Source: Macrostomum lignano (taxonomy: Eukaryota). From it: 32,737 nt of DNA. A program made the position numbers and the translations under genes. The DNA lies in contig NIVC01001144.1 of assembly GCA_002269645.1 (NCBI GenBank), positions 1 to 32,737 on the forward strand, read 5' to 3'. Below, piece by piece: positions 2-20,575 of this stretch (its first letter is position 1; each line of letters starts with the position of its first letter). The notes beneath the pieces were generated by a model. It had not been told where the DNA came from. It searched no databases and saw only the letters and a list, made by a program, of their open reading frames with translations.

Positions 2-708
2 GGTACGGAGTTTGTACGCGTCCGCTGTCGCCATGCTGTGTCGAAAAATGTTAAAGCGTCGTGAACGAGAAGGCATTCAAGGATCTCAAGTTAGCTCGGA
101 TGTACAGCGTGCAAGACAAAGCTGTTTGTCCCGTCGAAGCCTTTAAAATGTACGTCTCTCAACTACCGAATGGATGTAAGGTGTTGTTCCCAAGGCTCAA
201 TAAGTCTGGCTTCTCAGCCTGCCAACGACTCGGCAAAGATTCACTTGGAGACTTCATGAAGAATCTGAGTGCGTGTCTGGCTCTGCAGCGGAAGTACACC
301 AACCATTGTGTGCGAGTAACCACGGTGAGTAAAGATTGCATGGCCTACTCACTTCAGTAAAACTGTAAGAATACTGTCTTACCCAACTGCTGAAACTTAG
401 GTGAACTGTTTGGCCAAGGCCGGTTTCGATAATCAAGCGATTACACTAATGACGGACACAAGAATTCGAGCTCAGTGGATGTATACAAGCGGCGAGACAT
501 GGACTGTGTGGCCCGAATGAGCGCTTGTCTGGCTGCCTATGGGTCCAAAGTCACCAAGATTGACGACGATGCGGAATCCACCATCGAAAGTGTGACAACT
601 GGGTCTGATAGAGGAATACTAAAAAGAATCCACAACTATCACTTTCGAGAAAAAGCAGCTGATTCGTTAGAAAACTATACTAGAAATTCTGGTACTAAAC
701 AGCACTGA
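2..708 (+). mobile_element. Crypton-type (DUF3504/ZMYM-KCTD1-like) tyrosine recombinase, C-terminal part, 5'-truncated by the window; one intron (325-400) and two 1-nt frame breaks (~53-55, ~454-455)
   Basis: Spliced and repaired translation: GTEFVRVRCRHAVSKNVK..RMYSVQDKAVCPVEAFKMYVSQLP..LFPR..LGKDSLGDFMKNLS..YTNHCVRVTT|VNCLAKAGFDNQAITLMTGHKNSSSVDVYKR. This has the CPV..Y, YTNHxxR, TGH and catalytic Y motifs of this family. Donor GTGAGT at 325, acceptor TTAG at 400, phase 0. Confidence 0.8.
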
Positions 709-2253: not shown

Positions 2254-5200
2254 CTAACCATCACCAGCAGCCAGCCGGATTTGCTCCTTGAGCGCACTAG
2301 TCAGTTCCAAGCTGAGCTGCATCAGGCGTCTGCAGTAGCCGCTGAGGTTGCCATACCGACCGTACTGTGCCGCCGTCAGCAGCGGCGCTGGGTCAAAGTG
2401 CATCGACAAATCGCACACCGGCTGCGCCTCGAGATTTTGGTCGCCGCCAAAGTGCAGCGAGCCGCTGATGATGCGCAACTCCGGCCAAACATCTTCGGCG
2501 TCGCTGCTCGACGGCGAAATTGACGAACAACCGACCGCTGACGCGTCACCAGGACAGTCAGCGACTTTGGCACCCGGTCGCTGATCACTACTTTGCCAGT
2601 GGTTGGATCTCGGACCAGATAGGGAAACTCTTCACCGTCTGGGAAAAGTTCCCGGTGCATGCTCGGGCGGACTGGTTCGCACGCGGCCAGGTTAATGTGC
2701 AAGTCCAGCTGCTCCAGGTAGCCGGCAGCTGCAGCTCTGCCGCTGGCATCAACTGTGCTCGGTCGTCCGCAGAATTCGGCTTCATTGGCGCACTTTTGTC
2801 TCTGATCGACACTGCTTGAAGATTTGTTGTTCGACGCTGCTTTTCTTTGGCGTCTGCCATCTTTCTTAGTCAACTCGCTGGGAGGCATTGCAGCTGCGGC
2901 ATCTACCACTTCACCACCGACACTCTGTCTGCTTGTTGCTGAGAATTCACTTTCAGGAGTCATCAAAGTGAAGTTTTTATTGGATTTCTTCTCATTCGAA
3001 AAAACGCGTCATTAGTGCTCAATGCATTCACTGCTGCACCTGAGCGTTCCGCGTCGCTTTTGGATTCTGCCAAGGATTCCACACTTTCCGTATCTATTTT
3101 AGCTTCCACTACGCCAGCTGCTTTTGGGCCGCGTTCTTGACCTCTTTGACCCCTCTGGTTGGTCTTAGCTGACGAGCCTTCGTTGCTAGTGCTGCAACCA
3201 GTTGCGACCTCGGTGAAAACTTCAGAGGAGGTTGCACCGTCGGTTGTGCTGACATTTGTAAGATTTTCAGTTCCGCTTTTGACTTTAATGCATGCACCAA
3301 TTTTCTTTCTTGATGTTCGATGTTTTAGTATACTCCAATCGATTTCTGGACATTTGCGCTGTTCGCAAGTAGTTTCCATGATTCCAGCGGTTGCAACAAC
3401 GCCTTTTGACTTCATTTGTGTCTTACCTTGTTTGCCTGCTAAATTGCTACAGGCGCTGTCATCCATCACATTGGTGCTCTGCCTCTGCTCTGTTAAGCCT
3501 GAGCTGACCGTTTGTGTTTCAGCGGCTCCCTGAGTTTCAATGAAATCGTCTCTTCTGTCCAAAGATTGAGTTGCATCCCGAGCAGATTGTTCCGCACCAG
3601 CGAGATAATACTCATCTCCATCTTTTTTATCGCCTTTGCGCTTGCGTTTGAATTTTCTATTCTTTTCTGTTTGTGCGAGTTCGATTTTTCTCGGCGCATT
3701 TTCCAATCCGATGGCTTCACTTGGACTTCCAGTTTCACAGTCAGCTGTGCTGGAGGCTGTAATCGCTGAGTTTCTCTCGCCAGGCCTATCAGAGTCTAAT
3801 AAATTCATGTAAATACAATTCAGCGGTCGCTCGTAGACTCGCACTAGCTGCAATGAAAGATCATGCTGCAGGTGAGCCTGATAGGAAGCGCTCAAGCGCA
3901 CGGACACCTTCCAGCCGGTCAGAGCCGGCTCTGTCTGTTTAGGAATTTCTACATAGCCTAATGATTTCAGGGCCTTCTCGTAGACTTCTACGGTTGCTCC
4001 GGTGCTAATTCGATGCAGATCCGCAACAATTCCAGCTAGAAAGCCAACGCCTAGTTTGTATTTCTTTCGACGGTTTGGCTTCGGAGCCCGTTCCGGTTTA
4101 AGCGGCGGATGAGGCTCTTGAGATGCGCCGCCAGGAGCCGCAAGACTAACCATTTTCTCTGCGCGATGCTTTCTAGTGGCATCGGAGGCATCGCGGCGAC
4201 GAAAGTCGGGTCGCTCGCAACCCTTGCGGAACTTCTTACCGGCCGCCAGTGCTACTGCCAGCTCAGCTAGAGATATGCTACGGCGGTTGTCAGGAAGACC
4301 GTTAGTTGCGTTTAGGAAATAAACTCGGCCAACGCGAACTGAAAGTTCCAGGTCTTTTAGCATTGCAGAAACTTGGCATTCAGACCTGATGATCGCAGGC
4401 GAGAAAACTGGCGACACATCAGAGCGAATAAGCGACGCGCGGCTTCATCTGTCCATGATGTAAAATCAATACCATCCGTCCCGAGACACAGCGGAACGCA
4501 AACATCATGCATTTGATGCTCAACATTCACTGAGCCAAGGTGATCAATTAGCTCGATCCGACAACTGTTTGAAAGACATCGAGTGGCCATGACGGTTCCA
4601 CCTCCCTCCAAAAAGTAGCGCAAACCGTTGTTGTACTTCCTCGTCCAGCTGCCAGACAAGCCAAATCTAGCAGACAGTTCGCGGAGTTCATGTCGAAGGC
4701 GATCGATAGCTGACGGGGCTCCGATTGCCCGTATCAGAAGTCGGCGCGATCCTGTGGTCTCTTCCAGTTGTACAGAATCACATCCGGTAGTCAAGCGCAA
4801 ACGTGTCTCGTGAAAGCGAAGGGATCGCAACATTTCAGTGCTTAAAATTCCGGGCAAACGCTGTGTCAGCCGAATGGCTTTTCCAGAGAGACTTGAAATA
4901 ATTGCGGCGGAAGACACAATGGACGCTGCGCTGTGGGTGTAGACGAGAACGCGAGAGGCAACGTCCGCAAGTTCCGCCACGCCTCTAACGACCTCAGCCG
5001 AAATCTGAACCGATGAAGCGGATTCAACTCTTTGCCACTTGTACGTCACGGCACCGGACAATTCACTGCAAAACCGAACAAAACGTAGTATGCAGCTGCC
5101 CAAAAAGGCAAAATTCGCATCCGAAGCTTTATCAGTCAGCCGGTCCATCAAAAAAGCTAGGCGCTCAGACAATGATAGATCAAGCAGACATTTATTACTT

Positions 5201-8200
5201 TCCTCGAAGTTGCTTGCGACTTCGTCGAACTCAGAAAAGCAATGCAGAACAAGAGCGTAAAACTCGGCTGTAGGCATCAGCCCCTGGCTCTCACTTGATG
5301 ACCGAACGATTCCAGCTGCCCTCGCCCACTGAACCAGCAGCCACAGCAAAGGTAGCCGCCACGGACAGCGACTGTACAAGCTGAGAAGGTAGCGCGTCTT
5401 TCCCAGACCTACACTGTTCATACTGATGTCGCACTCCTGGCCATCATCCACGTCCTCACCGCCGTCCAGTCCAAGACGGCATCGAATCAACGGAACTTGG
5501 CGATCGAGGTATCGAGTCTTTTCCAACACTGCAGCATCCAGTGAGGGCCACACAAGCGTCTCGAGCCAATGACGATGGCGAGCGCATTCTCCCAGTACAG
5601 AAACCTCTGCGGGAAGCCACGGCTCAGAGTACGCTTTATCAAGAGGTAGCACACACAAGTCGATGTCTGATGAAGCCTCATCACACACAAGAATCGAGGC
5701 TGAGCCATACACCTTGCAACTGAGCACTCCTGCACACTGCTGGGACAGGCGACCGCTGACCAGTGCGGCGGCTGCGTCGGCACGACCGACTGCATCGCGC
5801 AGACCCGGAAGAGATTTGCGGAAGAAGGCAAAGACCGAGCGACCGATCGACACTTCGAGACCTTCATCAATTGACTGCAGTGACGCGCTGCCGGTCTGCA
5901 GTACAGAGGTCGACATGCCGTGAGACCGAATTTCACACAAAACGTCGGTCACGACCCACGGGAAACTTAAACCTCGTGGCTTCTTCGCCTTCGAGGTCCC
6001 GACACTTTTGTACGCCACTGCAAACCATGCAGCTGCCTGAGCTCTGCGTTTGTTCTGGTCGTCCCCAGCAAGTTGATCGAATATTCGCCGGTACTTGTTG
6101 CCCAAAGCGTCAAACCCCTGCCGCATGGCTATGTGAGCGCGACCACGATCTGTTCGAAGCAGCGGGTGCCACTGAAAGCAGCGACCGAGCTGCAGCTCCC
6201 TGTCGCTTCTTGCGCCCCACTGCGACATCAGTGCCCGCAGATCAGAGCGGTAGAGCTCAAACAGCCGACTGGCGCTTTTCAAAAACTTCTCCTGACCGGC
6301 CCATGTCACATCGTACTCGTACTGTTGATTTTCTTGATCGATCGAGTCCAGCAGATCCCAATCCAGGTCGCAGGAGCGGCATCTTCGGTACAACTGACCC
6401 AGAAGCTTATCTGAAGGGTAGGAATCAGAGCGCTCCATGAAGTCTGGGTAGCCTTTCTCTTTAACGAATTTTACTGCTGCTTCAGGCACCTCCGGTACGA
6501 TTCCTGTCTTTGGAAAGTCGACTGCGACCGATTGAGCCTTTGCAACTTCGATCGCCAACTGGTTGAGGGCGCCACCAGGCAGCTGATCACAAATGGCCAG
6601 GTGCAAATTCGCTACTCGACCAAGAAAGCTGTTCGCAAAGTTCTGTGCGCAGAAGTTGGCCAGCAAGACTGGGTTCGTAACGTCAGCTCCTTCGGGTAGC
6701 TGTGGCTCGTTTGATGCCAGCTTCGCATAGTCCAGAGGTTCGTGGACTGCCTCTAGAGGCGGCACGAGCTCCGGGTCCCACACAACTCCAAACTGGTCTC
6801 CGTCGAGGTCACCGCCGCTGCAATCGGCAGCCAGTGAGCGGCGGCAGTCAGTGCGCGAAGGAAGCAGCAGCAGGTTAAGCCACCCACACAGCTGCGGTTT
6901 GGCCACGGCCTGCACCACTCGAACGTCTCCCGGATGCAGGCATGGGTTTCGATATATCAGCACTGGACCCTCAATCTGCTTAGCCTGATCACTGGGTTTC
7001 CGCTTGATTCGAAGAAACACCTGGCCCTCAGCCAGCACTTCTAGCGGATCAGGTGCGCCCATTACGCGACAACCGAGGTCGCCCACTGGCAGAGCAGCTC
7101 GCTTCTGCAGGTCGGACAGCCGAAATCGGAAAACGCATCGCAGCAGACCGAGCCAGTGCGGATCGGTCAGAAAGTTGAAGTGTCGCGCAGCTTCCACAAC
7201 ACTCGCTGTTGCCAAGCTCGGTTTGTCAATAAATTCTCGAAGTGCCGCGGTGGCTGCCGAAGGAGTCGCTAGAGACTCGGCTATTTTTCGCAGTTCCGCG
7301 TCGAGAATGTTTCGCAGACGTTGCGACGGGTTCCAGCTGTCACACTTGGAGGCCAGCGCCTCCAGCAGAGTGATGATCTCTCTGTTGAGGCAAAGTCTAC
7401 CGCACTGAGACGTTCCGACAATGCACAAGTTCGTGTCTGAGCTTTTGAACTTCACAGTGGATGGTCTCAGCGAGATTCCTTGCTGAAGCTCTAGCTTTGG
7501 GTCCGTATCGGAGACAGTGGTCAGGACTCCTTTGGCTCCACCAAAGCGAAATTGGAAGGCAAACGGTAGCTCTGGCAGGTCCAGTTTGGATTTAATTGAC
7601 ATAGCGAGTTCTGAGCTGATTTTCCCGCTTCCTGCAATGTGCGAATGCTTTGCGAGGTCAAAATTTGCTGTGCACAATGCACATTAAAGCTCATATACAT
7701 GCACGAACTGATACTCACCGTCCGTCAGAAGGTCGTCATTGAGAGCTCGATGGTCAATACATTTCGATACTTGGTTGGTCTCTAATTTGGCTACCCATGT
7801 GTCAGCTGTATGAAAAAGTCCCAGTCGAGACAGATATTTGGAAACCGATCGGAACTCTGTCGGATTCTCGACCAGCTGGTCTCGCAGTCGCTGCACTTCC
7901 TCGACAGACTCTGCGGCCACAAAGAAGCACCGGCTCGTTCGTAGCTGACCGCTGCTTGCCGAAAAAAACCGGTACATCCGTCCGGCCAGAGTCAGACCGT
8001 CCCGCAGCACTTTGGTGAATCGAGCACCGACTGAAGCAGCAGAGGCAACATTGACGCCGCCGCCTCGCACGACTCCGCATGACTCGTCGGTGAAGGCGAC
8101 CATCACGAGTCTTTCTGGAGGGATCCGACGCAGAAGGCGACTCGATGCTACGGGAGTGGCGGGGAACAATACCACTCTTGTTGGAGTCACAGCAACTCGC

Positions 8201-11200
8201 TTCACGAGCAGTGAGCCACATGCAACTGGCGGACCAACAGCAGCGTCTTCCGCATCCTCATCGGTCACCTCGAGAACACTAAGCGCAGAGTTCAGCCGGT
8301 CTCCAAGCACATCTTCAAAGAAGGCGTCGCCATCCCCAGTAGCCGACAACGTCAACAGTGCGTTGGCCAGTTTAATGAGGTTTGTTGGGCAGTCATTATC
8401 GAGTTCAGAGTCTGCTTGTGCAGCTGCTGCGATTCTATTTTCAATACCTGCAGCTGATTCTTGAGTGATGAGGAAGCGACGGCTGTCAATCAGAGCCTGC
8501 ATTTGCCAGCGGCACTGGAACTCTGCTTTGTCACGGACGGACAATTCCTGGAATGGCTTAACTCTATGACAGTATTCAAAGAGCGTCTCACTTTCCCCTG
8601 GGGAGGCATACTCTTCGGACTCAAGTCGGGTATCGAGCAGCGGCAGAGGAAACGTCGCACGGAGTCTCATCCAGTCGAGGGGCTCAGCTGATCGAGGGGC
8701 TCTTGGTAGATGCAGGATGAGTACAGAATTGGTTTCAAATTTCTGACGAATTTTTCCTGAAAGATCTTCAGTGTTGCAAAAGCTTTCAGAAGAAATCGGA
8801 TTGAAATCCCAGTCGTTTTGCTGATCCTCCTGTTCCACAGTTTTTAGAATAGTTGGCGCTACTGCCAAAGGTAAAGCAATCAATTCTTTGGACCAGTCCA
8901 CCATTGCAAACCCGTTAGTTCCACCAATGCTTGATACTACCAGTGAAACTCCAGCAGCACGAAAAAATACTGAAATGAGATTGCGATTAGAATCTATTTC
9001 TAATTCGATATTTTCTTCCGAAATATGCAACGCCTCAACTACTTTAGTTTTTGTCTGAAACTGGCCAATTGCAACGGAACTGAGAGTCTGAACTGTTCTT
9101 TCGGATTTTTTATGGAATCGTCGTCCGAATCTTCCACTTTTCGCACGTCTGGCATCGCATAAATTGGCTTATTGTTCAGTTCGAATGACCAACGACGCGC
9201 GAATTCGTGATAAATGCCAAGAGGAGAATCTAAAGTTGAGTGCGTTTCCAAGTACACGGCAGCGACTGTTGAGTCTCGTGGAAACAACCCAGAAGGCAAA
9301 GAATGATTCTCACACTGATCAAATAGCAAATCGATGGAGCGAACTTTAACGAAGTTTTCTTTCTCAATACTTAGCATTAAAGCTTCTTTATCACAGTCTT
9401 TCCTCTGCAACTCGGGGCAGCATAGCTGGACCATTATCTGGCCTCCCATTTTGCCTGTCAATCCCATTGAGTAGTGAGCTACAACAGATCGAGCAGCTTG
9501 CACAGGGCTCTTTCGTTCAGCCAAATGCTTTACCATTTGCCGCGTCAGCTCGGATGGAACCCCGTTTTCAAGCGAGTGATCGTCCACCACACGGTTCAGC
9601 ATATTTTCTCTTTCGCTCAAATCAGTTGCAGCGGCCGCTTCGTTTTCATCGACGACCATCAAGAACCGACTGTCCTTTTTGCGCGCCCGGCCGCGGCTCT
9701 GCAACAGCTGCACAAGCGACTTGGCTGCATCGAACCTGATAACAACGTCGCACGCGCTGACGTCGAGACCCTCTTCCAGCACTGCTGTGCTCACAATCAG
9801 ACGACTGCTGCCGTCATTGAAGCTGTCGATAGCCACTGACTGCTCGCCGTCCCAGTCCATGCCGTCTGCGCCACCACGTCCTACGACCAGCTGGGGCCTG
9901 AGGTTCGGGAAGAGCTCGGACAGGCGCGCGTGCAGCAGTCGGGCCGTTCGGCGAGTCCACGTCAGCACGAGAAGTCGAGACTCTTTGTTCTCGACCTGCA
10001 ACAGCGATGCGGCCTCGGCTTCGACCACCCGCATGCGCTCAGAAACATCCAGCTGCCAGTTTGGATCAGAGCGAAATCGCATGGTGGCTGTGGAAATGCA
10101 GCGAAGGTCGTCGAGAAAAGGGGCTGCCTTTGAGACGCCAACAAGTTGGGATGCTTCCATGGCGGCCAGGAGACACAGCAGGTCGCGAATCTCTTCTCGG
10201 TTGTTTCGAAATTGTGGCAGGCCGCTATAGATGAAGCCGCGCAGCTGACCAGCCAGCATGCGCAGCCGGTTGCTTGGCACAGGCATCGACTCTCGGATCG
10301 GTAGGCCAAGGTTCAGTTTTTCGTTGCTATCTGTTAAAAGTTTGCTAAGGTCCTCAGTGAATTGTATCTGCAGCGAGGACGGATGACAGAGCTTGGTCAC
10401 TGTTTGCACGGCCGACTCCTCTGCTTTTGCAGGTCGGAACGCAACGCAATCAGGAGAAAAAAATGATAAAAGACGACGCAGTTTCTTCTGTCCTTCGGAA
10501 TCGCCGTCTCCAGGTTCAACAGGCGATGCAGTCAAGCCTAGCAAACGAGGTCGCATATCCTCTGGCAGTTGGTGGTTCAGCTTAAGGACGCGCGGGAAGT
10601 TGTGCCGCGGGGAACTCGCGTGGTGGCACTCGTCGATTACAATGCATGAAAACGCGCTCAAGTCTGGAATTCGCCGATTAGTAATTAGGGAGAGCAGGGC
10701 GCCTGCCGTGATCACCACCTAAAACGATCCGGAAAAGCTTTTTTGTTAAGGAGAGACGAGACTTGGGTAAATAGTTAAAAATAACAAGATTGCTTACCAA
10801 ATCATGCGCTCCATCAAGAAGTTCTCGAATTTTCCAAGAGGTCATAATTTCTCCGCACAGCGCGGCCACTTTTAGCCCAGTGTCCGCCTCCAGCGCCTTG
10901 GCCTGCTGGAACACCAGCGGCACTCGCTCCACCAGCAGGGCCCCCATCCGTCCCGGGTTCAGAGCTCGCATCCGAGCCAGCAGCAGAGCTGCCACCAGCG
11001 TCTTGCCTGAGCCAGTGGGCAGCACCAGTACAAGATCTCGCTGAAGTGCCTCAACGAAAGCCTCCAGCTGGTAGGTCCGTGGCACTTTGTCCGATACAAG
11101 GAGGTCGGACCAGTCGAAGTGCTCAGGAGCAGAGGGCGAAGCGAACTGAACTGGGACTTGGCGAGCTATTAGACTGGACCAGTTGCCGAAATCAGGGACT

Positions 11201-11589
11201 ATTGATCTGCCATAGAAGGTGTCCATGTTCACCTCATCGATTTGTTTCTTTAGCCGTGGTATCAATTTCTGGGAAACTTTGTCGTTTGGCTCACATTGAA
11301 TCCCTCCAACAATGACTTTTTTCTTTCCTAATGAGATATAATTCGAACCATGCGGTCCGAATGGCAGCTGAACTCCAACACTGGCATTGCAAAATTGACA
11401 TCGTACTTCATCCTTTGCTCCTACCTTTTCAATGTACAAACTAGCCATTGCAGCTACTTTGAATTGGTTTTTCACTGATATATATACTTCATTCTTTGCT
11501 TTCCAGAAAAAGCAAACAAACTTTGCGGGGAGCAAACGTTTGCTACAATTTCCACAATCAACTCCTATGTTTCGATTTTTTGATGGCAT
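2254..11589 (-). CDS. Multidomain RNA-silencing protein: Zn module + Dicer/RLR-type helicase + RNA-dependent RNA polymerase + Cid1/TENT nucleotidyltransferase + KH-like + C-terminal domain (~3,057 aa after repair of four 1-nt frame breaks)
   Basis: Exons 11589-10798, 10718-7719 and 7631-2254. The GT-AG introns join HDL|VVITAG and LTDG|SGKIS in conserved motifs. The remaining ORF junctions (~9110, ~4370, ~3000, ~2518) are overlapping -1 shifts at short base runs. 9336-79-87+4=9174 nt=3058 codons including the stop. No in-frame nonsense codon otherwise. The N-terminus may extend via a splice acceptor at 11616. Confidence 0.85.
4680..4880 (-). other. KH-like segment
   Basis: LRFHETRLRLTTGCDSVQLEETTGSRRLLIRAIGAPSAIDRLRHELREL follows the KH pattern (helix-TG-strand-strand-G-helix) but lacks the GxxG loop. 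Confidence 0.35.
5150..5830 (-). other. Cid1/TENT (non-canonical poly(A)/poly(U) polymerase) family nucleotidyltransferase domain
   Basis: KVYGSASILVCDEASSDIDLCV (GS at 5701-5706, DID at 5659-5667), VPLIR, third Asp in ECDISMN (5428-5430), then TRYLLSLY..LPLLWLLVQWARAAGI..GLMPTAEFYALVLHCF. This matches the pol-beta-like TUTase/PAP signature, with all three catalytic Asp present. Confidence 0.85.
5930..9100 (-). other. Cellular (eukaryotic) RNA-dependent RNA polymerase domain with its N-terminal accessory region
   Basis: VAVTPTR, FTDE, YRFFSASSGQLR, KYLSRLGL, TDGSGKIS, FQFRFGGAKG, LNREIITLL, MGAPD, RNPCLHPGDVR, catalytic CSGGDLDGD (DLDGD at 6796-6810), AVDFPKTG, YPDFME, SDKLLGQLYR and LSFPW all occur in canonical order. 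Confidence 0.97.
7632..7718 (-). other. Intron 2 of the fusion gene (87 bp, phase 1)
   Basis: GTGAGT donor at 7718 and TTGCAG acceptor at 7632. Removal restores the RdRP motif LTDGSGKIS (family xTDGxGxIS). Confidence 0.92.
9560..11090 (-). other. SF2 Dicer/RIG-I-like DExD/H helicase domain
   Basis: Q motif PRTYQLEA; motif I LPTGSGKT (10999-11022); Ia VERVPLVFQQ; II DECH (10623-10634); III LGLTASP; IV LVLTWTR; V STAVLEEGLDVSACDVVIRFD; VI QSRGRAR (~9681-9701). Confidence 0.95.
10719..10797 (-). other. Intron 1 of the fusion gene (79 bp, phase 0)
   Basis: GTAAGC donor at 10797 and TTTTAG acceptor at 10719. Removal restores helicase sequence LDGAHDLVVITAG. Confidence 0.9.
11230..11565 (-). other. 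N-terminal putative Zn-binding domain (CxxC-x48-CxxC)
   Basis: DCGNC (C12, C15) and RCQFCNASVG (C64, C67). Spacing and the CxxCxxxVG motif recall the RIG-I CTD / Yippee-Mis18 / CULT fold. The fold assignment is inference. Confidence 0.45.
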
Positions 11590-14422: not shown

Positions 14423-14469
14423 ATTAAAACACCTTAAAAACAAAAAACTGCTAAACATAAAACAAGCGC

Positions 14470-17400
14470 TATGTCAAACATACAAGAGCCACCATGTCAA
14501 ACATAAAAGAGCCACCATTTCGAACGTAGAGTTACCATTAAGAACATTAAAGAGCCGCCATGTCGAACATTAAAAAGCCACCATGTCAAACATAAAACAG
14601 ACACCATTAAGAACATTAAAGAGCCACCATGTCGAAACATTAAAGAGCCACCATGTCAAACATAAAACAGACACCATTAAGAACATTAAAGAGCCACCAT
14701 GTCGAACATTAAAAAGCCACCATGTCAAACATTAAAGAGCCACCATTTCAAACCTAAAAGAGCCACCATGTCGAACATTAAAGAGCCACCATGTCAAACA
14801 TAAAAAAGCCACCATATCAAACATAAAAGAACTACCATGTCAAACATTAAAGAGCCACCATGTCGAACATTAAAGAGCCACCATGGCAAACATAAAACAG
14901 ACACCATTAAGAACATTAAAGAGCCACCATGTCGAACATTAAAGAGCCACCATGTCAAACATAAAACAGCCAACATTTCGAAAATTAAAGAGCTACCATG
15001 TCAAACATTAAAGAGCCACCATGTCAAACATTAAAGAGCCACAATGTCAAACCTAAAGGAGCCACCATGTCGAACATTAAAAAGCCACCATGTCAAACAT
15101 TAAAGAGCCACCATTTCAAACATAAAAGAGCAACCATGTCAAATATTAAAGAGCCACAAGGTCAAACATGAAAGTGCCACCATGTAAAACATTAAAGAGC
15201 CACCATGTCGAACATTAAAGAGCCACCGTGTCAAACATAAAACAGACACTATTTCGAACATTAAAGAGCCACCATGTCGAACATTAAAAAGCCACTATGT
15301 CAAACATTAAAGAGCCACCATGTCAAACCTAAAAGAGCCACCATGTCGAACATTAAAGAGCCATTATGTCGAACATAAAAAAGCGACCATATCAAACATA
15401 AAAGAACTACCATGTCAAACATTAAAGAGCCACCATGTCGAACATTAGAGAGCCACCATGTCGAACATGAGAGAGCCACCATGTCAAACATAAAACAGAC
15501 ACCGTTCAGAACATTAAAGAGCCACCACGTCGAACATTAAAGAGCCACCATGTCAAACATAAAACAGCCAACATTTCGAAAATTAAAGAGCCACTATGTC
15601 AAACATTAAAGAGCCACCATGTCGAACATTAAAGAGCCACCATGTCAAACATAAAACAGCCACTATGTCGAACATTAAAGAGCCGCCATGTCAAACATAA
15701 AACAGAGCCACCATTTCGAAAATTAAAGAGCCACCATGTCAAACATTAAAGAGCCACCATGTCGAACATTAAAGAGCCACCATGTCAAACATTAAAGAGC
15801 CACCATGTCTAACATTAAAGAACCACCATGTCGAACATTAAAGAGCCACCATGTCAAACATAAAACAGCCAACATTTCGAAAATTAAAGAGCCACCATGT
15901 CAAACATTAAAGAGCCACCATGTCGAACATTAGAGAGCCACCATGTCAAACATTAAAGAGCCACCATTTCAAACCTAAAAGAGCCACCATGTCGAACATT
16001 AAAAAGCCAACATGTCAAACATTAAAGAGCCACAATGTCAAACATTAAAGAGCCACCATGTCGAACATTAAAGAGCCACCATGTCAAACATAAAACAGAC
16101 ACCATTAAGAACATTAAAGAGCCACCATGTCGAACATTAAAGAGCCACCATGTCAACATAAAACAGCAAACATTTCAAAAAGTAAAGAGCCACTATGTCA
16201 AACATTAAAGAGCCACCATGTCAAACATTAAAGAGCCACCATGTCAAAAATAAAACAGACACCATTAAAAACATTAAAGAGCCACCATGTCGAACATTAA
16301 AGAGCCACCATGTCAAACATAAAACAGCAACTATGTCGAACATTAAAGAGCAACCATGTCAGACATAAAACAGAGCCACCATTTCGAAAATTAAAGAGCC
16401 ACCATGTCAAAAATTAAAGAGCCACCATGTCGAACATTAAGGAGCCACCATGTCAAAGATAAAAGAGCCAACATGTCAAACATTGAAGAGACCCCATGTC
16501 AAACAATAAAGAGCCACCATGTCGAACATAAAGAGGCACCATGTAAAACATATACGTAACTCCATGTCAAACATTGAAGCGACACCATGTCGAACATAAA
16601 AGAGCCACCATGTCAAACATTAAAGAGCCACCATGTCGAACATAAAAGAGCTTCCATGTCAAACATTAAAGAGCAACTATGTCAAACATAAAAGAGCCAT
16701 CATGTCAAACATATAAGTGACTTTATGTAAAACATTAAAGAGCTACCATATGTCAAACATATACGTGAATCCATAGTAGACATTAAAGAGCCACCATGTC
16801 GAACATTAAAGAGCCAACATGTTAAAAATACAAGAGCCACCATGTCGAACATTAAAGAGCTAACATGTTAAAAATACAAGAGCCACCATGTCAAACATAT
16901 ACATGACTCCATGTCAAACATTGAAGAGACACCATGTCGAACATAAAAGAGCCACCATGGCAAACATATACATGACTCTATGTCGAACAATCAAGAGCCA
17001 CCATGTCAAAAATATACATGACTCCATGTCAAACATTAAAGAGCCACCATGTCGAACATTTAAGAGCCACCAGGTCAAACATGATAGTGCCACCATGTAA
17101 AATATTAAAGAGCCACCATGTCAAATATTAAAGAGTCACCAGGTCAAATATATACATGACTCCATGTCAAACATTGAAGAGCCACCATGTCGAACATTAA
17201 AGAGCCACCATGTCTAACATAAAAGAGCCACCATGTCAAACATTAAAGGGCCACCATGTCAAACATAAAAAAGCCACCATGTCAAACATTAAAGAGCCAC
17301 CATGTCAAACATATATGTGACTCCATGTCAAACATATATGTAACTCCATGTCAAACAGTAAAGAGCCACCAGGTCAAACATATACATGACTCCATGTCAA

Positions 17401-17867
17401 ACATTAAAGAGCCGCAATGTCAAACATATATGTAACTCCATGTCAAACAGTAAAGAGCCACCAGGTCAAAAATATACATGACTCCATGTCAAACATTAAA
17501 GAGCCGCAATGTCAAACATAAAAGAGCCACCATGTCGAACATAAAAGAACCACCATGTCGAACATAAAGGAACCACCATGTCGAACACAAAAGAGCCACC
17601 ATGTCAAACATAAAACAGCCACTATGTCAAACATAGAAGAGCCACCATGTCAAACATTAAAGAGCCACAATGTCTAACATTATATAGCCACCATGTCAAA
17701 CATTAACGAGTCACCATGTCAAGTATATTCGTAACTCCATGTCAAACATCAAAGAGCTACCATGTCGAGCATTAAAGAGCCACCACGTAAAACATTAAAG
17801 AGCCACCATGTCAAACATAAAAGAGCCATCATGTCAAACATTAAAGAGCCATCATGTCAAACATAAA
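14470..17867. repeat. 23-bp minisatellite array (consensus ACATTAAAGAGCCACCATGTC[A/G]A), roughly 145-150 units
   Basis: Directly visible tandem units with variant classes (..ATAAAACAG.., ..ATATACATGACTCC.., ..ATGAAAGTGCC..). Confidence 0.97.
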
Positions 17868-18539
17868 TGTAGAAAAAATACTAAACTAAAAACTATTTAA
17901 TTGGAGTTAAATTGAAGGAGCAGGAGGAGCAGTAAGTGGGCGCAGGGCCCAAACCGATATATTTATGGAACATTTAACTTTGGGGGGTTAAGCCCAGAAT
18001 AATAGAGAGGGGGTGGAGTGCGCGACTGAGGAAAGAGGCGAGAACGGAGAGCCAATCAGAACGCAGCAAGGGAGAGAGAGATAAGAATAACAAGATTGAG
18101 CTAGACAGAGAGAGAGAAAACGGAGTAAACAGAGACAATTGAAGGTGAACTAAGAAATGACTAGGAAAGTCGCGACACTCCCCCAAAAAATGGAACATTT
18201 TTTGAATTTTTTGAATTTTCGAGTACCAATAGAATTATGAATTAGAGTTCAAGAAACAACTTTAAAAGCAAATTTAACAATGGTGCACAAATACGACTAA
18301 GAATTTCAATACAAAACCTGTGGAGACTAGAGTGAATGCAAATTTGACAAAGAAATTTCACGTGTGCGATTTTAATGAATAAATTGTTACAACCAAAAGA
18401 AAACTGACTACATTTACCTAGAACGCAGCAAGGGAGAGAGAGATAAGAATAACAAGATTGAGCTAGACAGAGAGAGAGAAAACGGAGTAAACAGAGACAA
18501 TTGAAGGTGAACTAAGAAATGACTAGGAAAGTCGCGACA
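17868..18539 (-). mobile_element. Internally deleted LTR retrotransposon inserted in the minisatellite
   Basis: TG..CA termini with a perfect 5-bp TSD ATAAA (17863-17867 and 18540-18544). Full 310-bp 3' LTR at 17868-18177, preceded on the minus strand by PPT GGGGGAG (18178-18184). The truncated 5' LTR (18420-18539) appears identical to 18058-18177 over 120 bp. Confidence 0.88.
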
Positions 18540-20475
18540 ATAAAAGAGCCACCATGTCAAACATTAAAGAGCCACCATGTCTAACATTAAAGAGTCACCA
18601 TGTCGAACATTAAAGAGCCACCATGTCAAACATTAAAGAGCCACCATGTCTAACATTAAAGAACCACCATGTCGAACATTAAAGAGCCACCATGTCAAAC
18701 ATAAAACAGCCAACATTTCGAAAATTAAAAAGCCACCATGTCAAACATAAAACAGCCACCATTTCGAAAATTAAAGAGCCACTATTTCAAACATTAAAGA
18801 GCCACCTTGTCAAAAATTAAAGAGCCACCATGTCGAACATTAAAGAGCCACCTTATCAAACATTAAAGAGCCACCATGTCGAACATAAAAGAGCCACCAT
18901 GTAGAACATAAAATAGTCACTATTACAAACATGAAAGTGCCACCATGTAAAACATTAAAGAGCCACCATGTCAAACATTAAAGAGCCACCAGGTCAAGCA
19001 TATACATGACTCCATGTCAAACATTGAAGAGCCACCATGTCGAACATAAAAGGGCCACCATGTCAAATATTAAAGAGCCACCATGTCGAACATTAAAGAG
19101 CCACCAGGTCAAACATGAAAGTGCCACCATGTCAAATATTTAAGAGCCACCATGTCGAACATTTAAGAACCACCATGCCAAACATAAAATAGCCACCATG
19201 TGAAACATATGCGTGACTCCATGTAAAACATTAAAGAGCTACCATATCAGACATATACATGACTCCATGTCAAACATATACGTGACTCAATGTTAGACAT
19301 TAAAGAGCCACCATGTCGAACATTAAAGAGCTAACATGTTAAAAATACAAGAGCCACCATGTCAAACATATACATGACTCCATGTCAAACATTGAAGAGA
19401 CACCATGTCTAACATTAAAGAGCCACCATGTCAAACATTCAAGAGCCACCATGTCTAACATTAAAGAGCCACCATGTCAAACATAAAACAGCCACCATTT
19501 CGAAAATTAAAGAGCCACTATTTCAAACATTAAAGAGCCACCTTGTCAAAAATTAAAGAGCCACCATGTCGAACATTAAAGAGCCACCTTATCAAACATT
19601 AAAGAGCCACCATGTCGAACATAAAAGAGCCACCATGTAGAACATAAAATAGTCACTATTACAAACATGAAAGTGCCACCATGTAAAACATTAAAGAGCC
19701 ACCATGTCAAACATTAAAGAGCCACCAGGTCAAGCATATACATGACTCCATGTCAAACATTGAAGAGCCACCATGTCGAACATAAAAGGGCCATTATGTC
19801 AAATATTAAAGAGCCACCATGTCGAACATTAAAGAGCCACCAGGTCAAACATGAAAGTGCCACCATGTCAAATATTTAAGAGCCACCATGTCGAACATTT
19901 AAGAACCACCATGCCAAACATAAAATAGCCACCATGTGAAACATATGCGTGACTCCATGTAAAACATTAAAGAGCCACCATGTCAAACATAAAACAGCCA
20001 CCATTTCGAAAATTAAGGAGCCACCATTTCGAAAATTAAAGAGCCGCCATGTTAAACATTAAAGGGCCACCTTGCCAAATATTAAAGAGCCAATATTTCA
20101 AACCTAAAGGAGCCTCATGTCGAACATAAAAGAGCCACCATATCGAACATAAAAGAGTCACCATGTTAAAAATTAAAGAGCCACCATGTCGAACATTAAA
20201 GAGCCACCATGTCAAACAAAAAAGCCACCATTTCAAACATAAAAGAGCTAACATGAAGAACATTAAAGAGCCACCATGTCGACCATTAAAAGAGCCACTA
20301 TGTCGAACATACAAGAGCCACCATGTCGAACATAGAAAAGCCACCATGTCAAACATAGAAAAGCCACCATGGCAAACATTAAAGAGCCACCATGTCGAAC
20401 ATTAAAGAGCCACCATGTCGAACATAAAAGAGCCACCATATCAAACATAAAAGAGCCACCATGTCAAACATTCAA
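18540..20475. repeat. 23-bp minisatellite array, continuation after the LTR insertion (~84 units)
   Basis: Same unit as 14470-17867. Contains a ~500-bp internal duplication with a 736-bp offset. Confidence 0.97.
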
Positions 20476-20575
20476 GATATACAATTTCAAATGTAAAGGT
20501 ATAAAGCGCCATGCCAATTTAAAGGAGCCACTATAAAGCCAAGGAAATTGTCGCTCTAGCTACTTATTGTCTGGT

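What the first reader, a model, noticed from the sequence alone, without database searches (positions are those of the whole stretch)
5150..6000. Catalytically intact tailing enzyme attached directly to the RdRP C-terminus
Seen: the Cid1/TENT core follows the RdRP terminal LSFPW motif after about 60-80 aa and keeps three Asp. The C-terminal lobe lacks an obvious nucleotide-recognition loop (no IEDPF-like motif is visible to me). Established: that loop sets ATP versus UTP choice in Cid1/TUT/PAP enzymes, and RDE-3 pUG tails recruit RdRP in C. elegans. Inference: the domain may add non-templated tails of unusual specificity to RdRP templates or products in cis.
Basis: partly seen in the sequence, partly recalled or inferred. 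Interest (0 to 1): 0.75.

Follow-up and report, generated by a model that had tools for sequence, protein, structure and literature searches.

The report
RNA tailing enzyme fused to RdRP
A flatworm gene joins an RNA-copying enzyme to an RNA-tailing enzyme (plus a Dicer-type helicase and RNA-end-binding modules), and the tailing domain keeps its catalytic residues but lacks the usual parts that choose which nucleotide is added.

Summary
On the minus strand of this Macrostomum lignano contig, the RdRP ends in LSFPW (5970-5956). A Cid1-like terminal nucleotidyltransferase (TENT) domain follows at 5877-4888. G660/S661 and Asp673, Asp675 and Asp752 are invariant in 55 non-redundant relatives. An AlphaFold model (core pLDDT about 90) matches only TENT structures, and the family profile hits GLD-2, Tailor, CutA and Cid1.

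The nucleotide-recognition loop is missing. By alignment, three further nucleotide-contacting positions also depart from the canon:
- The ribose/base-reading Asn is an invariant Lys (K762).
- The stacking Tyr is a small residue.
- One triphosphate-binding Lys is hydrophobic.

The domain belongs to one roughly 3,000-residue gene: zinc-ribbon-like N-terminus, Dicer/RIG-I-type helicase, RdRP, TENT, KH fold, then a Cet1/RESC-like triphosphate-tunnel fold. The helicase-RdRP-TENT order recurs in Hydra, a sponge and dinoflagellates, and relatives of similar length carrying the TENT domain occur in an acoel, a diplonemid and a dictyostelid. The window's frame breaks look like assembly indels.

Best reading: a single-chain version of RdRP complexes such as Rdp1-Hrr1-Cid12 or Rdr1-Rdn1, tailing RdRP-bound RNA 3' ends with unpredictable specificity. 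Activity and specificity are untested.

The parts
10798..11589 (-). Exon 1. N-terminal CxxC...CxxC zinc-ribbon-like region (CGNC 11556-11545, CQFC 11400-11389), then the start of the SF2 helicase with Walker A GSGKT (11013-10999).
   Evidence: ORF and motifs. Pfam DEAD/ResIII. 100% match to P0013/P0214 residues 1-265.
10719..10797 (-). Intron 1 (79 nt, GTAAGC...TTTTAG).
   Evidence: Sequence read. The join DL|VVITAG matches P0013 and P0214.
9114..10718 (-). Rest of the Dicer/RIG-I-like helicase: DECH box 10634-10623, Helicase_C, motif VI QSRGRA 9701-9684. A linker follows.
   Evidence: Pfam. Best PDB sequence matches are the ancestral Dicer helicase, DCL1, RIG-I, LGP2, MDA5 and Dicer-2.
9113..9113 (-). 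Frame break. The window lacks one base that both sister copies carry, next to an A-run.
   Evidence: Three-copy alignment. P0013, P0211, P0213 and P0214 read through.
7719..9111 (-). Linker and N-terminal part of the RdRP (the Pfam RdRP match begins at VTPTRVV, 8190).
7632..7718 (-). Intron 2 (87 nt, GTGAGT...TTGCAG). It contains the in-frame TAA at 7686-7684.
   Evidence: Sequence. The join TDG|SGKISS matches P0001.
5956..7631 (-). RdRP catalytic and head part: DLDGD 6810-6796, terminal LSFPW 5970-5956.
   Evidence: Pfam PF05183, E 7.8e-91. Motif positions.
5878..5955 (-). Short linker between RdRP and TENT, low confidence in the model (ORF aa 577-602).
   Evidence: pLDDT below 50 for model residues 13-29. 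Length varies across relatives.
5416..5877 (-). TENT N-terminal helices and pol-beta palm: G660/S661 (5706-5701), D673 (5667-5665), D675 (5661-5659), D752 (5430-5428).
   Evidence: Invariant in 19/19 and 55/55. Model pLDDT about 90. PF22600.
4888..5415 (-). TENT fingers lobe (PAP/OAS1 substrate-binding type). Features:
- G759 and the invariant K762-T763 in place of the canonical NT motif (5409-5395).
- WAR with R788 (5328-5320).
- T805-A806 at the N-terminus of the helix where TENTs carry Ser-Tyr (5271-5266).
- Strand VQI running directly into a helix where the recognition loop should be (5010-4996).
   Evidence: Secondary structure. Alignments to GLD-2, Tailor and CutA. Residue roles in CutA. 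Conservation counts. No PF03828 hit.
4657..4875 (-). KH-like beta-alpha-alpha-beta-beta-alpha domain without a GXXG loop (ORF aa 937-1009).
   Evidence: Model elements E361-H433. In the homologue model this segment matches hnRNP K KH3 and PCBP KH1, TM about 0.6-0.7, rmsd 2.6-2.8 A.
2257..4620 (-). C-terminal Cet1/RESC1-2-like triphosphate-tunnel fold. It is read across frame breaks at 4388, about 3009 and 2511. A low-complexity insert of about 380 aa (roughly 3790-2650) looks specific to Macrostomum. Conserved strands include LELSVRVGRVYF (4351-4316) and RPLNCIYMNLL (3829-3797).
   Evidence: Alignment A2. Model pLDDT 76. Foldseek RESC1/2 E 1.7e-10 to 3e-9 and Pct1/Cet1 E 1e-5 to 1e-4. Collinear with P0214 to 2257.

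Best explanation
The stretch encodes a divergent but catalytically competent Cid1-type terminal nucleotidyltransferase (TENT). It is one domain of a single giant RNAi-type enzyme with the order zinc-ribbon-like N-terminus, Dicer/RIG-I-type helicase, cellular RdRP, TENT, KH fold, Cet1/RESC-like triphosphate-tunnel fold.

Shown here:
- The fold, and homology to TENTs.
- An invariant GS + DxD + D metal site.
- Loss of the nucleotide-recognition loop.
- Obligate collinearity with an RdRP across distant eukaryotes.

Inferred:
- The domain uses two metal ions to add untemplated nucleotides to an RNA 3'-OH.
- Because it is tethered about 27 residues behind the RdRP, its substrate is the 3' end of an RNA already held by the helicase-RdRP. 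That could be the template, creating or marking an initiation site as Rdn1 does for Tetrahymena Rdr1. It could instead be the newly made strand.
- This makes the protein a one-chain equivalent of RdRP complexes built from separate RdRP, helicase and nucleotidyltransferase subunits.

The usual readers of the incoming nucleotide are gone. These are the Asn of the NT motif, the stacking Tyr, and the His/Asn loop. An invariant Lys (K762) sits in the pocket instead, so nucleotide choice cannot be read from the known TENT code. It is likely either relaxed or set by a new mechanism.

The pocket for the primer's last base looks like Tailor's, with a small residue at 754, Gly759 and a loop one residue shorter than in CutA. 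That would tolerate purine ends, including G.

The C-terminal tunnel fold probably holds 5'-triphosphate ends of de novo RdRP products. If so, both ends of the RNA are handled by one polypeptide. This last point is the most speculative.
For: Fold and homology:
- AlphaFold model with a 19-sequence alignment: mean pLDDT 78, about 90 over the TENT core.
- The Foldseek PDB top 50 are all TENTs, including CutA, TUT1, TUT7, Cid1 (TM 0.60 on target), GLD-2, mtPAP, RET1, TbTUT4 and URT1.
- Family profile against PDB sequences: GLD-2 5e-9, Tailor 1e-8, CutA 2e-8, Cid1 3e-6.
- PF22600 is hit by 19/19 members. The Hydra orthologue passes the curated cut-off, 41 bits against 27.

Activity:
- G660, S661, S672, D673, D675, D752 and K762 are invariant in 55/55 non-redundant members. 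The 19 aligned members are only 19-29% identical to the window copy.

Remodelled pocket:
- No PAP_assoc hit in 0/19 members.
- The strand runs straight into the helix at model residues 316-320.
- K762/T763 align with Tailor and CutA N-T, G759 with Tailor G350 / CutA A400, and T805/A806 with CutA S444/Y445. The roles of those residues come from the CutA paper, PMC7498324.

Linkage:
- The helicase-RdRP-TENT order is seen by Pfam in Hydra vulgaris, Oopsacas and Prorocentrum.
- Proteins of similar length carrying the TENT domain occur in Effrenium, Convolutriloba, Sulcionema and Synstelium. Marchantia and Artemia have shorter models.
- Two apparent stand-alone TENTs sit 60 bp downstream of helicase-RdRP ORFs on the same strand.
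- The Hydra protein aligns collinearly with window 11562->3785.

Precedent:
- Rdr1-Rdn1/Rdn2 and Rdp1-Cid12 complexes, and template tailing by an RdRP-associated uridyltransferase (PMC4066745 and its references).

Intact gene:
- A 3058-aa M. lignano model reads through every break.
- The indels are private to each contig.
Against: - No activity data exist for any member.
- Three or four canonical NTP-contacting residues are replaced, so the domain could bind nucleotide poorly or do different chemistry.
- The residue equivalences rest on HMMER alignments and on the secondary structure of a model. I could not superpose coordinates.
- The window copy alone is below Pfam's cut-off (19 bits).
- Action in cis on RdRP-bound RNA is inferred only from the covalent linkage and from analogy.
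- The window copy carries four frame breaks, which I attribute to assembly error but cannot prove.
- I recall that the annotation's gene models are transcript-based.
Confidence: 0.68

Rival explanations
1. The domain is a pseudo-enzyme. It would be a TENT-shaped scaffold or RNA 3'-end clamp that positions RNA for the RdRP or helicase but transfers no nucleotide.
For: Canonical NTP contacts are missing. There is no recognition loop, the Asn is Lys, the Tyr is a small residue, and the Cid1 K193 / CutA K425 position is hydrophobic. In CutA, N403A abolishes use of ATP and UTP. The neighbouring tunnel fold also seems to have lost its ExE metal site.
Against: All three metal-binding Asp, the GS turn and Ser672 are invariant in 55/55 members spanning animals, dinoflagellates, a diplonemid and a liverwort. 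Dead NTases normally lose these residues quickly. The replacement Lys is itself invariant, which suggests a functional pocket.
Confidence: 0.12
2. The domain is active but is not an RNA tailer. It would be an OAS/cGAS-like or primer-independent oligonucleotide synthase, triggered by the dsRNA the RdRP makes, or a maker of short primers for the RdRP.
For: The fold class is shared with OAS (palm plus PAP/OAS1 substrate-binding lobe; the lobe's name is from PMC7498324). Like OAS, it lacks a recognition loop (from my own knowledge). It is fused to a dsRNA-producing enzyme and an RLR-type helicase.
Against: No OAS, cGAS or Mab21 structure appears among the 50 best Foldseek matches or the 44 profile matches in the PDB. 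All meaningful hits are RNA-tailing TENTs. The primer-base pocket residues align with Tailor and CutA.
Confidence: 0.06
3. It is an active TENT working in trans on other RNAs, for example marking small RNAs or cleaved targets for decay like HESO1, Tailor or Cid1. Fusion to the RdRP would serve only co-localisation or co-expression.
For: Most characterised relatives (Cid1, TUT4/7, Tailor, CutA) tail RNAs for turnover. A flexible, low-confidence linker separates the domains.
Against: The fusion is obligate and ancient. No stand-alone member was found among 74 representatives, and the two candidates were split gene calls. That argues for mechanistic coupling. Separate-subunit RdRP complexes already couple an NTase physically to the RdRP.
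Confidence: 0.11
4. The locus is a decaying pseudogene, a contaminant or a horizontally acquired fragment, so the domain has no function in this animal.
For: The window copy has frame breaks at 9113, 4388, about 3009 and 2511. The annotated protein P0001 is only a fragment. The gene forms a GC-rich island (0.51-0.56) in AT-rich flanks.
Against: - Two canonical GT-AG introns are present.
- Three copies lie on contigs of up to 249 kb in the same M. lignano assembly and are 99.4-99.7% identical.
- Indels are private to each contig. At three of the window's four missing coding bases, the sister copies carry two different bases, which is typical of consensus errors at polymorphic sites.
- The sister copies themselves lack a T at 5155, where the window is intact.
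- An intact 3058-aa model exists.
- There are no substitutions among the copies in the TENT region.
Confidence: 0.03

Closest known systems
RdRP complexes with a separate nucleotidyltransferase subunit: S. pombe RDRC (Rdp1 + Hrr1 helicase + Cid12) and Tetrahymena RDRC (Rdr1 + Rdn1 or Rdn2)
   Same: The same three activities are combined: cellular RdRP, helicase and Cid1-family nucleotidyltransferase. The NTase is physically coupled to the RdRP. In Tetrahymena the associated uridyltransferase tails the template and influences initiation (PMC4066745 and its reference to Talsky & Collins 2010).
   Different: Here all the activities sit in one polypeptide. The helicase is Dicer/RIG-I-type SF2. From memory, Hrr1 is a different helicase type. 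The NTase lacks the recognition loop and has Lys for the canonical Asn. I could not compare it directly with Cid12 or Rdn1 sequences.
C. elegans RDE-3/MUT-2 (pUG tailing) with RRF-1/EGO-1 and the Dicer-related helicase DRH-3
   Same: A TENT makes tails that feed an RdRP, and a Dicer-related helicase works with the RdRP. The RDE-3 and DRH-3 roles are summarised in PMC5594548. pUG recruitment is from my own knowledge.
   Different: These are separate genes in the worm. No RDE-3 orthologue was found in flatworms (PMC5594548). Nothing here indicates that this domain makes UG repeats.
Structurally characterised TENTs: Cid1, CutA, Tailor, GLD-2, TUT7, mtPAP
   Same: Two-lobed pol-beta fold, GS + DxD + D site, the WA[RK] helix and the G...FF helix of the fingers lobe. 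The primer-base pocket has Tailor's one-residue-shorter loop and Gly.
   Different: - No PAP_assoc/recognition loop.
- Invariant Lys for CutA N403 / Cid1 N171.
- A small residue for CutA Y445.
- A hydrophobic residue for CutA K425.
- Always fused to an RdRP.
Helicase-RdRP fusion proteins of Dictyostelium (RrpA-C), peronosporomycete oomycetes, Hydra and Nematostella
   Same: The same N-terminal DEAD/ResIII + Helicase_C followed by RdRP (PMC4791657; PMC3661229). The Hydra protein is collinear with the window gene over about 2,400 residues.
   Different: Those papers describe only the helicase and RdRP domains. A 'PAP_NTPase' domain in two amoebozoan RdRPs is mentioned only in a figure legend (10.1101/2023.10.19.562841). 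I found no mention of the TENT's altered pocket, the KH fold or the tunnel fold in the searched literature.
RESC1/RESC2 of trypanosome RNA editing and Cet1/Pct1 RNA 5'-triphosphatases (for the C-terminal neighbour of the TENT)
   Same: Predicted triphosphate-tunnel barrel: Foldseek E 1.7e-10 to 3e-9 for RESC1/2 and 1e-5 to 1e-4 for Pct1/Cet1. [quoted passage not shown]
   Different: There is no detectable sequence similarity. The ExE metal motif is at best half retained (LE[VIL][ST]xRFG). The module is fused to an RdRP. Binding of 5'-ppp RNA has not been tested.

Membership tests
Cid1-like non-canonical nucleotidyltransferases (TENT / ncPAP, pol-beta superfamily) | Pol-beta palm with the hG[GS] turn, a DxD pair and a third carboxylate | tested here: met
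   G660 S661, D673, D675 and D752 are invariant in 19/19 and 55/55 relatives.
Cid1-like non-canonical nucleotidyltransferases (TENT / ncPAP, pol-beta superfamily) | Two-lobed fold (palm plus PAP/OAS1-type fingers) matching solved TENTs | tested here: met
   Model pLDDT is about 90 over the core. The Foldseek top 50 are all TENTs, probability 1.00, TM up to 0.60 on Cid1.
Cid1-like non-canonical nucleotidyltransferases (TENT / ncPAP, pol-beta superfamily) | Significant sequence or profile similarity to the family's palm model (Pfam PF22600 / solved TENTs) | tested here: met
   The family profile hits GLD-2 at 5e-9 and Cid1 at 3e-6. 19/19 members hit PF22600, best 3.4e-14. The window copy alone scores 19.3 bits, below the 27-bit cut-off. 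The Hydra orthologue scores 41 bits.
Cid1-like non-canonical nucleotidyltransferases (TENT / ncPAP, pol-beta superfamily) | PAP-associated domain with the nucleotide recognition motif (IEDPF...[HN] loop) | tested here: not met
   0/19 members hit PF03828 at E<=1. The model goes from strand 316-318 directly into helix 320-340. No DPF-like motif appears in the alignment.
Cid1-like non-canonical nucleotidyltransferases (TENT / ncPAP, pol-beta superfamily) | Asn-Thr motif reading the 2'-OH and base edge of the incoming NTP (CutA N403/T404) | tested here: not met
   The Lys-Thr pair K762/T763 aligns with N-T of Tailor and CutA. Lys is invariant in 55/55. The role of the Asn is taken from PMC7498324.
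Cid1-like non-canonical nucleotidyltransferases (TENT / ncPAP, pol-beta superfamily) | Ser-Tyr at a helix N-terminus (gamma-phosphate contact and stacking on the nucleotide; CutA S444/Y445) | tested here: inconclusive
   T805 (T/S in 49/55) and A806 (small in 53/55) occupy the aligned positions, and the helix starts at T805 in the model. Aromatic F808/Y809 lie one turn further along. No coordinate superposition was possible.
Cid1-like non-canonical nucleotidyltransferases (TENT / ncPAP, pol-beta superfamily) | Template-independent nucleotide addition to an RNA 3'-OH | not testable with these tools
   This needs a biochemical assay.
RDRC-type RdRP / helicase / nucleotidyltransferase assemblies | Cellular RdRP with an intact DxDGD site | tested here: met
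   PF05183 at E 7.8e-91. DLDGD at 6810-6796.
RDRC-type RdRP / helicase / nucleotidyltransferase assemblies | Associated helicase with intact ATPase motifs | tested here: met
   GSGKT, DECH and QSRGRA are present. The type is Dicer/RIG-I-like rather than Hrr1-like.
RDRC-type RdRP / helicase / nucleotidyltransferase assemblies | Physical association of the NTase with the RdRP | tested here: met
   The link is covalent. They share one reading frame, with a 26-aa linker. This is conserved in every relative examined.
RDRC-type RdRP / helicase / nucleotidyltransferase assemblies | Role in small-RNA biogenesis or silencing | not testable with these tools
   There are no small-RNA or knockdown data for this gene. 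Macrostomum RdRPs are only catalogued (PMC5594548).
Helicase-RdRP fusion clade (Dictyostelium Rrp, oomycete RDR, Hydra/Nematostella RDR) | DEAD/ResIII + Helicase_C N-terminal to the RdRP in one protein | tested here: met
   Collinear with the Hydra LOC105846402 protein. The architecture is described in PMC4791657.
OAS / cGAS-type nucleotidyltransferases | Closest structural or sequence similarity to OAS/cGAS/Mab21 rather than to TENTs | tested here: not met
   None appear among the 50 best Foldseek matches or the 44 profile matches.
Triphosphate tunnel metalloenzymes (Cet1-like), for the C-terminal neighbour | Tunnel-forming beta-barrel fold | tested here: met
   Homologue model pLDDT 76. RESC1/2 E 1.7e-10 to 3e-9 with TM up to 0.65, and Pct1/Cet1 E 1e-5 to 1e-4.
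Triphosphate tunnel metalloenzymes (Cet1-like), for the C-terminal neighbour | Metal-binding ExE (motif A) plus a motif C Glu, required for hydrolysis | tested here: inconclusive
   The candidate motif A strand reads LE[VIL][ST]x[RH]FG. The second Glu is replaced and the first is not universal. No residue-level superposition was possible. RESC1/2 similarly lack two of the three Glu.

The most novel reading that the evidence does not exclude
The protein is a self-contained small-RNA factory that holds both ends of its own product. The Cet1/RESC-like tunnel would grip the 5'-triphosphate of the de novo RdRP strand. The TENT would use a pocket built around an invariant lysine, with no recognition loop, to add a tail. 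The composition of that tail would follow a rule not seen in any known TENT: relaxed, mixed, or dictated by the neighbouring domains. It would then mark or terminate the RNA. This would be a covalent, ancient form of the RdRP complex, present in the common ancestor of animals, amoebozoans and alveolates and since lost from most lineages.
Probability: 0.2. Interest if true: 0.85.

Novelty: new variant of a known kind. Interest (0 to 1): 0.65.

Why it matters
RdRP-based RNA silencing repeatedly recruits a nucleotidyltransferase: Cid12 in fission yeast, Rdn1/2 in ciliates and RDE-3 in worms. How tailing and RNA copying are coupled is still poorly understood, because the partners are separate and loosely associated.

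Here the coupling is hard-wired into one chain. That chain is conserved from protists to animals (Hydra, a sponge, an acoel, a flatworm and a brine shrimp). It offers a single recombinant protein in which template tailing, RNA synthesis, helicase action and possibly 5'-triphosphate capture can be studied together.

It also works as a Rosetta-stone argument that RdRP, Dicer-type helicase and TENT form an ancestral functional unit.

The TENT is a natural experiment in nucleotide selection. It keeps the chemistry but has discarded the loop, the Asn and the Tyr that define specificity in every solved relative. Working out what it adds would extend the known rules for TENT specificity.

For Macrostomum, a regeneration model in which RNAi works well, it identifies a candidate amplification enzyme. 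The public annotation currently splits it into fragments.

Tried and rejected
1. Searching the C-terminal 532 aa alone in the word-indexed protein database found nothing. Searching with the alignment also found nothing. This is a sensitivity limit of word seeding, not absence. The exhaustive HMMER search found 74 representatives.

2. A single-sequence search of PDB sequences gave only a spurious phage tail hit. The profile search was needed.

3. Stand-alone TENT-KH-tunnel proteins (P0146, P0151) would have argued for an independent module. Their contigs show a helicase-RdRP ORF ending 60 bp upstream on the same strand, so they are split gene calls.

4. Pseudogene reading. The window's four frame breaks were compared with two sister contigs and with an intact 3058-aa model. 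The indels are private to each contig, and at three of the four the sister copies differ from each other, so assembly error is the better explanation.

5. Contaminant or HGT reading of the GC-rich island. Rejected because of the spliceosomal introns, and because copies lie on contigs of up to 249 kb in the same M. lignano assembly, one next to a CAP-domain gene.

6. OAS/cGAS-like identity is not supported by any hit list.

7. Within-species dN/dS for the TENT region is impossible, because the three copies have no substitutions there.

8. Pfam found nothing in the KH-like and C-terminal regions. Only structure prediction gave a lead.

9. Literature searches for an RdRP-TENT fusion returned only the helicase-RdRP fusion and one figure-legend mention of a PAP_NTPase domain in two amoebozoan RdRPs.

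Full report
**What is at the coordinates**

The window is a 32.7-kb contig of the flatworm Macrostomum lignano. The annotated protein BOX15_Mlig023635g1 (P0001, 1486 aa) is 100% identical to the query and lies on a contig of exactly this length.

The finding sits on the minus strand, inside a 1108-codon open frame (7683->4360). Pfam assigns residues 16-432 of that frame to the cellular RdRP family at E 7.8e-91.

Motif positions:

| Feature | ORF residues | Window coordinates |
|---|---|---|
| RdRP catalytic DLDGD | 292-296 | 6810-6796 |
| LSFPW | 572-576 | 5970-5956 |
| G660/S661 (in VYGSASILVCDEASSDIDL) | 660-661 | 5706-5701 |
| D673 | 673 | 5667-5665 |
| D675 | 675 | 5661-5659 |
| D752 (in ECDISMN) | 752 | 5430-5428 |

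The GS turn is 84 residues after LSFPW, not 60-80. The domain extends to about 4888, well beyond the stated end of 5150.

**Is it really a nucleotidyltransferase?**

On its own the window sequence is weak evidence:
- PF22600 (MTPAP-like central palm) scores 19 bits against a 27-bit cut-off.
- A single-sequence PDB search found nothing meaningful.
- A word-indexed search with the C-terminal half found nothing.

Searching with the whole RdRP-containing frame changed the picture. It returned a family of proteins that cover 94-98% of the query and carry PF22600 together with the RdRP domains. An exhaustive HMMER scan with the C-terminal 532 residues found 74 representatives. All but the weakest few fall in this family, and no canonical TENT appears among them.

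I aligned 19 members, which are 19-29% identical to the window copy. The invariant columns are G84, S85, S96, D97, D99, D176, G183, K186, G286 and F292. These include the GS turn and all three carboxylates.

The supporting evidence then stacks up:
- All 19 members hit PF22600, best E 3.4e-14. The Hydra orthologue passes the curated cut-off at 41 bits.
- The family profile hits solved TENTs: GLD-2 5e-9, Tailor 1e-8, CutA 2e-8, Cid1 3e-6, then TUT7, TbTUT4, MEAT1 and mtPAP.
- An AlphaFold2 model built on the alignment has mean pLDDT 78, and about 90 from residue 30 to 430.
- The model's 50 best Foldseek matches in the PDB are all terminal nucleotidyltransferases, including CutA, TUT1, TUT7, Cid1, GLD-2, mtPAP, RET1, TbTUT4 and URT1. 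All have probability 1.00, and TM reaches 0.60 on Cid1.

The fold is there.

**Is the active site intact?**

| Window residue | Conservation in 55 | Canonical equivalent |
|---|---|---|
| G660, S661, S672, D673, D675, D752 | 55/55 | GS turn and metal triad |
| K762 | 55/55 Lys | CutA N403 (Asn of the NT motif) |
| G759 | 54/55 | Tailor G350 / CutA A400 |
| R788 | 53/55 R or K | WA[RK] helix |
| T805 | 49/55 T or S | CutA S444 |
| A806 | 53/55 A, G, T or S | CutA Y445 |
| V784 | hydrophobic in 44/55, never basic | CutA K425 |

Absolute retention of the metal-binding residues at this depth argues for a working enzyme. The set includes animals, dinoflagellates, a diplonemid and a liverwort.

The nucleotide pocket, however, is not canonical. 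Using the HMMER alignments to Tailor and CutA and the residue roles described for CutA (PMC7498324):
- The Asn-Thr pair hydrogen-bonds the 2'-OH and base edge of the incoming NTP (CutA N403/T404). Here it is Lys-Thr, with the Lys invariant.
- The Ser-Tyr at the helix N-terminus contacts the gamma-phosphate and packs against the nucleotide (S444/Y445). It aligns with T805-A806.
- The gamma-phosphate Lys (K425) aligns with hydrophobic V784.

The model's secondary structure supports these registers. G759 is at the N-terminus of helix 181-196, with K762 at +3, just as A400 and N403 are placed in CutA. Helix 229-239 begins at T805. I could not superpose coordinates, so the Tyr and Lys assignments remain alignment-based.

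**The missing recognition loop**

The start of the fingers lobe is recognisable, with G286 and F292-F293 invariant or nearly so. After a short hairpin (strands 303-305 and 316-318), the chain enters helix 320-340 directly. Canonical enzymes carry the IEDPF...[H/N] loop at this point, and that loop sets U versus A preference (summarised).

In relatives the same spot reads VVIDESIV, VNLDESKI, ATISPDVV and similar: an N-cap followed by a helix. No member hits PAP_assoc (PF03828) at E<=1.

**A Tailor-like primer pocket**

The segment between D752 and K762 aligns without gaps to Tailor (CDICLNSMGFCNT), but needs a one-residue insertion in CutA. The CutA paper notes that Tailor's loop is one residue shorter. 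It also notes that Tailor's Gly350 and Cys345 replace CutA's Ala400 and Asn394, which enlarges the pocket for a 3'-terminal guanine.

The family has Gly759 in 54/55 members, and S, C, T or A at position 754 in 53/55. This suggests, but does not prove, tolerance of purine 3' ends.

**The gene around it**

The TENT is one domain of a much larger gene. Reading upstream on the minus strand:
- Exon 1 (11589-10798) has a CxxC...CxxC region and the start of an SF2 helicase with GSGKT.
- A 79-nt GT-AG intron follows (10797-10719).
- The helicase continues with DECH, Helicase_C and QSRGRA.
- The helicase's best PDB matches are Dicer and RIG-I-like helicases: ancestral Dicer 3e-38, DCL1 5e-37, then RIG-I, LGP2, MDA5 and Dicer-2.
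- The in-frame stop at 7686-7684 lies inside an 87-nt GT-AG intron (7718-7632).

Downstream of the TENT:
- Residues 937-1009 form a beta-alpha-alpha-beta-beta-alpha unit.
- A second model was built on a homologue's tail with 14 aligned sequences, including three window segments (A2). It has pLDDT 76.
- Its first 67 residues match KH domains (hnRNP K KH3, PCBP KH1; rmsd 2.6-2.8 A).
- The rest matches RESC1/RESC2 of trypanosome RNA editing (E 1.7e-10 to 3e-9, TM up to 0.65) and the RNA 5'-triphosphatases Pct1 and Cet1 (E 1e-5 to 1e-4).

[quoted passage not shown] It lacks two of the three catalytic glutamates (PMC10201420). In this family the candidate motif A strand reads LE[VIL][ST]x[RH]FG, with the second Glu replaced. 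I therefore lean towards 5'-ppp binding rather than hydrolysis. That is a lead, not a result.

**Is the gene intact?**

The window shows frame changes at 9113, 4388, about 3009 and 2511. This is why the public annotation holds only fragments (P0001, and P0211-P0213 on other contigs).

Several lines point to assembly error:
- A 3058-aa UniRef model (P0214) is collinear with the window from 11589 to 2257 across every break.
- Two sister contigs from the same assembly are 99.4-99.7% identical over 9.5 kb.
- At each of the window's missing coding bases at least one sister copy has the base, and at three of the four the two copies carry two different bases. That is the signature of consensus errors at polymorphic sites.
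- Both sister copies lack a T in the T-run at 5155, where the window is intact.

I conclude that the breaks are most likely assembly indels and that the organism encodes an intact protein of about 3,000 residues. There are no substitutions among the three copies within the TENT region, so no within-species selection test is possible.

**Distribution and linkage**

The order helicase, RdRP, TENT was confirmed by Pfam in three proteins:
- Hydra vulgaris LOC105846402 (2566 aa)
- the sponge Oopsacas minuta (2664 aa)
- the dinoflagellate Prorocentrum (2737 aa)

The Hydra protein aligns collinearly with window 11562->3785.

Other members, identified from source names, protein length and the position of the TENT match:
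- the dinoflagellate Effrenium (2612 aa)
- the acoel Convolutriloba (cluster members of 2038 and 2670 aa)
- the diplonemid Sulcionema (2299 aa)
- the dictyostelid Synstelium (2472 aa)
- a Marchantia protein (a weak match, E 2.3e-5)
- Artemia (1256 aa, with precomputed RdRP and PF22600 domains)

Two proteins that looked like stand-alone TENT-KH-tunnel modules sit 60 bp downstream of helicase-RdRP ORFs on the same strand, so they are split gene calls. I found no case of this TENT type without an RdRP.

**Comparison with what is known**

Fusion of a Dicer-like helicase to an RdRP is established for Dictyostelium, peronosporomycete oomycetes, Hydra and Nematostella (PMC4791657; PMC3661229). Macrostomum RdRPs have been catalogued without domain analysis (PMC5594548; bioRxiv 2026.03.11.711021).

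The only mention of a nucleotidyltransferase domain in an RdRP that I found is a single sentence in a figure legend on amoebozoan RdRPs (10.1101/2023.10.19.562841). Public domain tables do list PF22600 on many members. I found no analysis of the domain's active site, nor of the KH or tunnel folds.

Functionally, the nearest systems are RdRP complexes with a separate NTase subunit. These are Tetrahymena Rdr1 with Rdn1 or Rdn2, where template tailing by the uridyltransferase influences initiation, and fission-yeast Rdp1 with Cid12 (PMC4066745). From my own knowledge, the worm pathway is also close: RDE-3 pUG tails recruit the RdRP, and DRH-3 is the Dicer-related helicase partner.

**Mechanism I commit to**

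- Shown: a TENT fold with an invariant two-metal site, covalently and obligately linked to an intact RdRP and an intact Dicer-type helicase.
- Inferred, about 0.7: it transfers nucleotides to RNA 3'-OH groups.
- Inferred, about 0.6: its substrates are the 3' ends of RNAs engaged by the RdRP, making the protein a one-chain RdRP complex.
- Inferred, about 0.5: its nucleotide preference departs from the Cid1/PAP code. The Asn, the Tyr and the loop are gone, and an invariant Lys has taken over.
- Speculative, about 0.3: the C-terminal tunnel captures the 5'-triphosphate of de novo products.

The rivals are a pseudo-enzyme, an OAS-like synthase, a trans-acting decay tailer and a dead gene. Each is addressed in its own section, and none fits the conservation pattern and hit lists as well.

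**Verdict**

This is a new variant of a known kind, a TENT with a remodelled pocket hard-wired to an RdRP. It matters chiefly as a tractable, ancient, single-polypeptide form of the RdRP complex.

Noticed in passing
window 4620-2257 (minus strand; frames change at 4388, ~3009, 2511): The C-terminal third of the gene is predicted to fold as a triphosphate tunnel like RESC1/RESC2 and the Cet1/Pct1 RNA 5'-triphosphatases. The ExE metal motif seems half lost. It may bind the 5'-ppp ends of RdRP products, as RESC2 binds guide RNA. Pfam finds nothing there.
   Followed up: partly
window 4875-4657 (minus strand): A KH-type fold without a GXXG loop sits between the TENT and the tunnel module. It is conserved across the family as the 'LPxSLS...FH..RL..GA.V' segment.
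   Followed up: partly
window 9113, 4388, ~3009, 2511; also 5155 in L002/L003: Single-base indels are private to each of three 99.4-99.7% identical M. lignano copies, and at several of them the other copies differ from each other. They break the frame and cause the public annotation to split a roughly 3,000-aa gene into fragments (P0001, P0211-P0213). An intact 3058-aa model, P0214, exists.
   Followed up: yes
window ~3790-2650 (minus strand): A low-complexity insert of about 380 aa, rich in Lys, Ser, Thr and Glu, interrupts the tunnel module in Macrostomum. It is absent from the other aligned relatives.
   Followed up: no
window 11556-11389 (minus strand): The N-terminal ~165 aa before the helicase carry CGNC...CQFC, a zinc-ribbon-like pair. 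A similar pair is present in the unrelated-source homologue P0015. It has no Pfam match.
   Followed up: no
window 14453-23851, 20570-20979 and 23980-24432: A satellite of about 9.4 kb made of 23-bp units (AAACATTAAAGAGCCACCATGTC, with 46/69-bp higher order) and strong strand skew. An 18-bp repeat array (TCTGGGGGATGCTTGCTA) lies inside it, and a second copy of that array lies just beyond its end. The 18-bp arrays create spurious Cys/Leu/Gly-rich ORFs.
   Followed up: no
window 61-360 (plus strand): By eye, this 99-aa ORF resembles the C-terminal part of a Crypton/DUF3504-type recombinase-derived domain. It has no Pfam hit at E<=0.1.
   Followed up: partly
L004 1282-8339; contig of P0151: In metagenome assemblies the gene callers split homologues of this gene into a helicase-RdRP protein and an 'RdRP_head + MTPAP-like' protein 60 bp apart. 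This mimics stand-alone TENT proteins.
   Followed up: yes
L003 3970-6329: One sister copy of the gene in M. lignano has a CAP-domain (PF00188) gene about 3.7 kb upstream. This fits an ordinary nuclear location.
   Followed up: no
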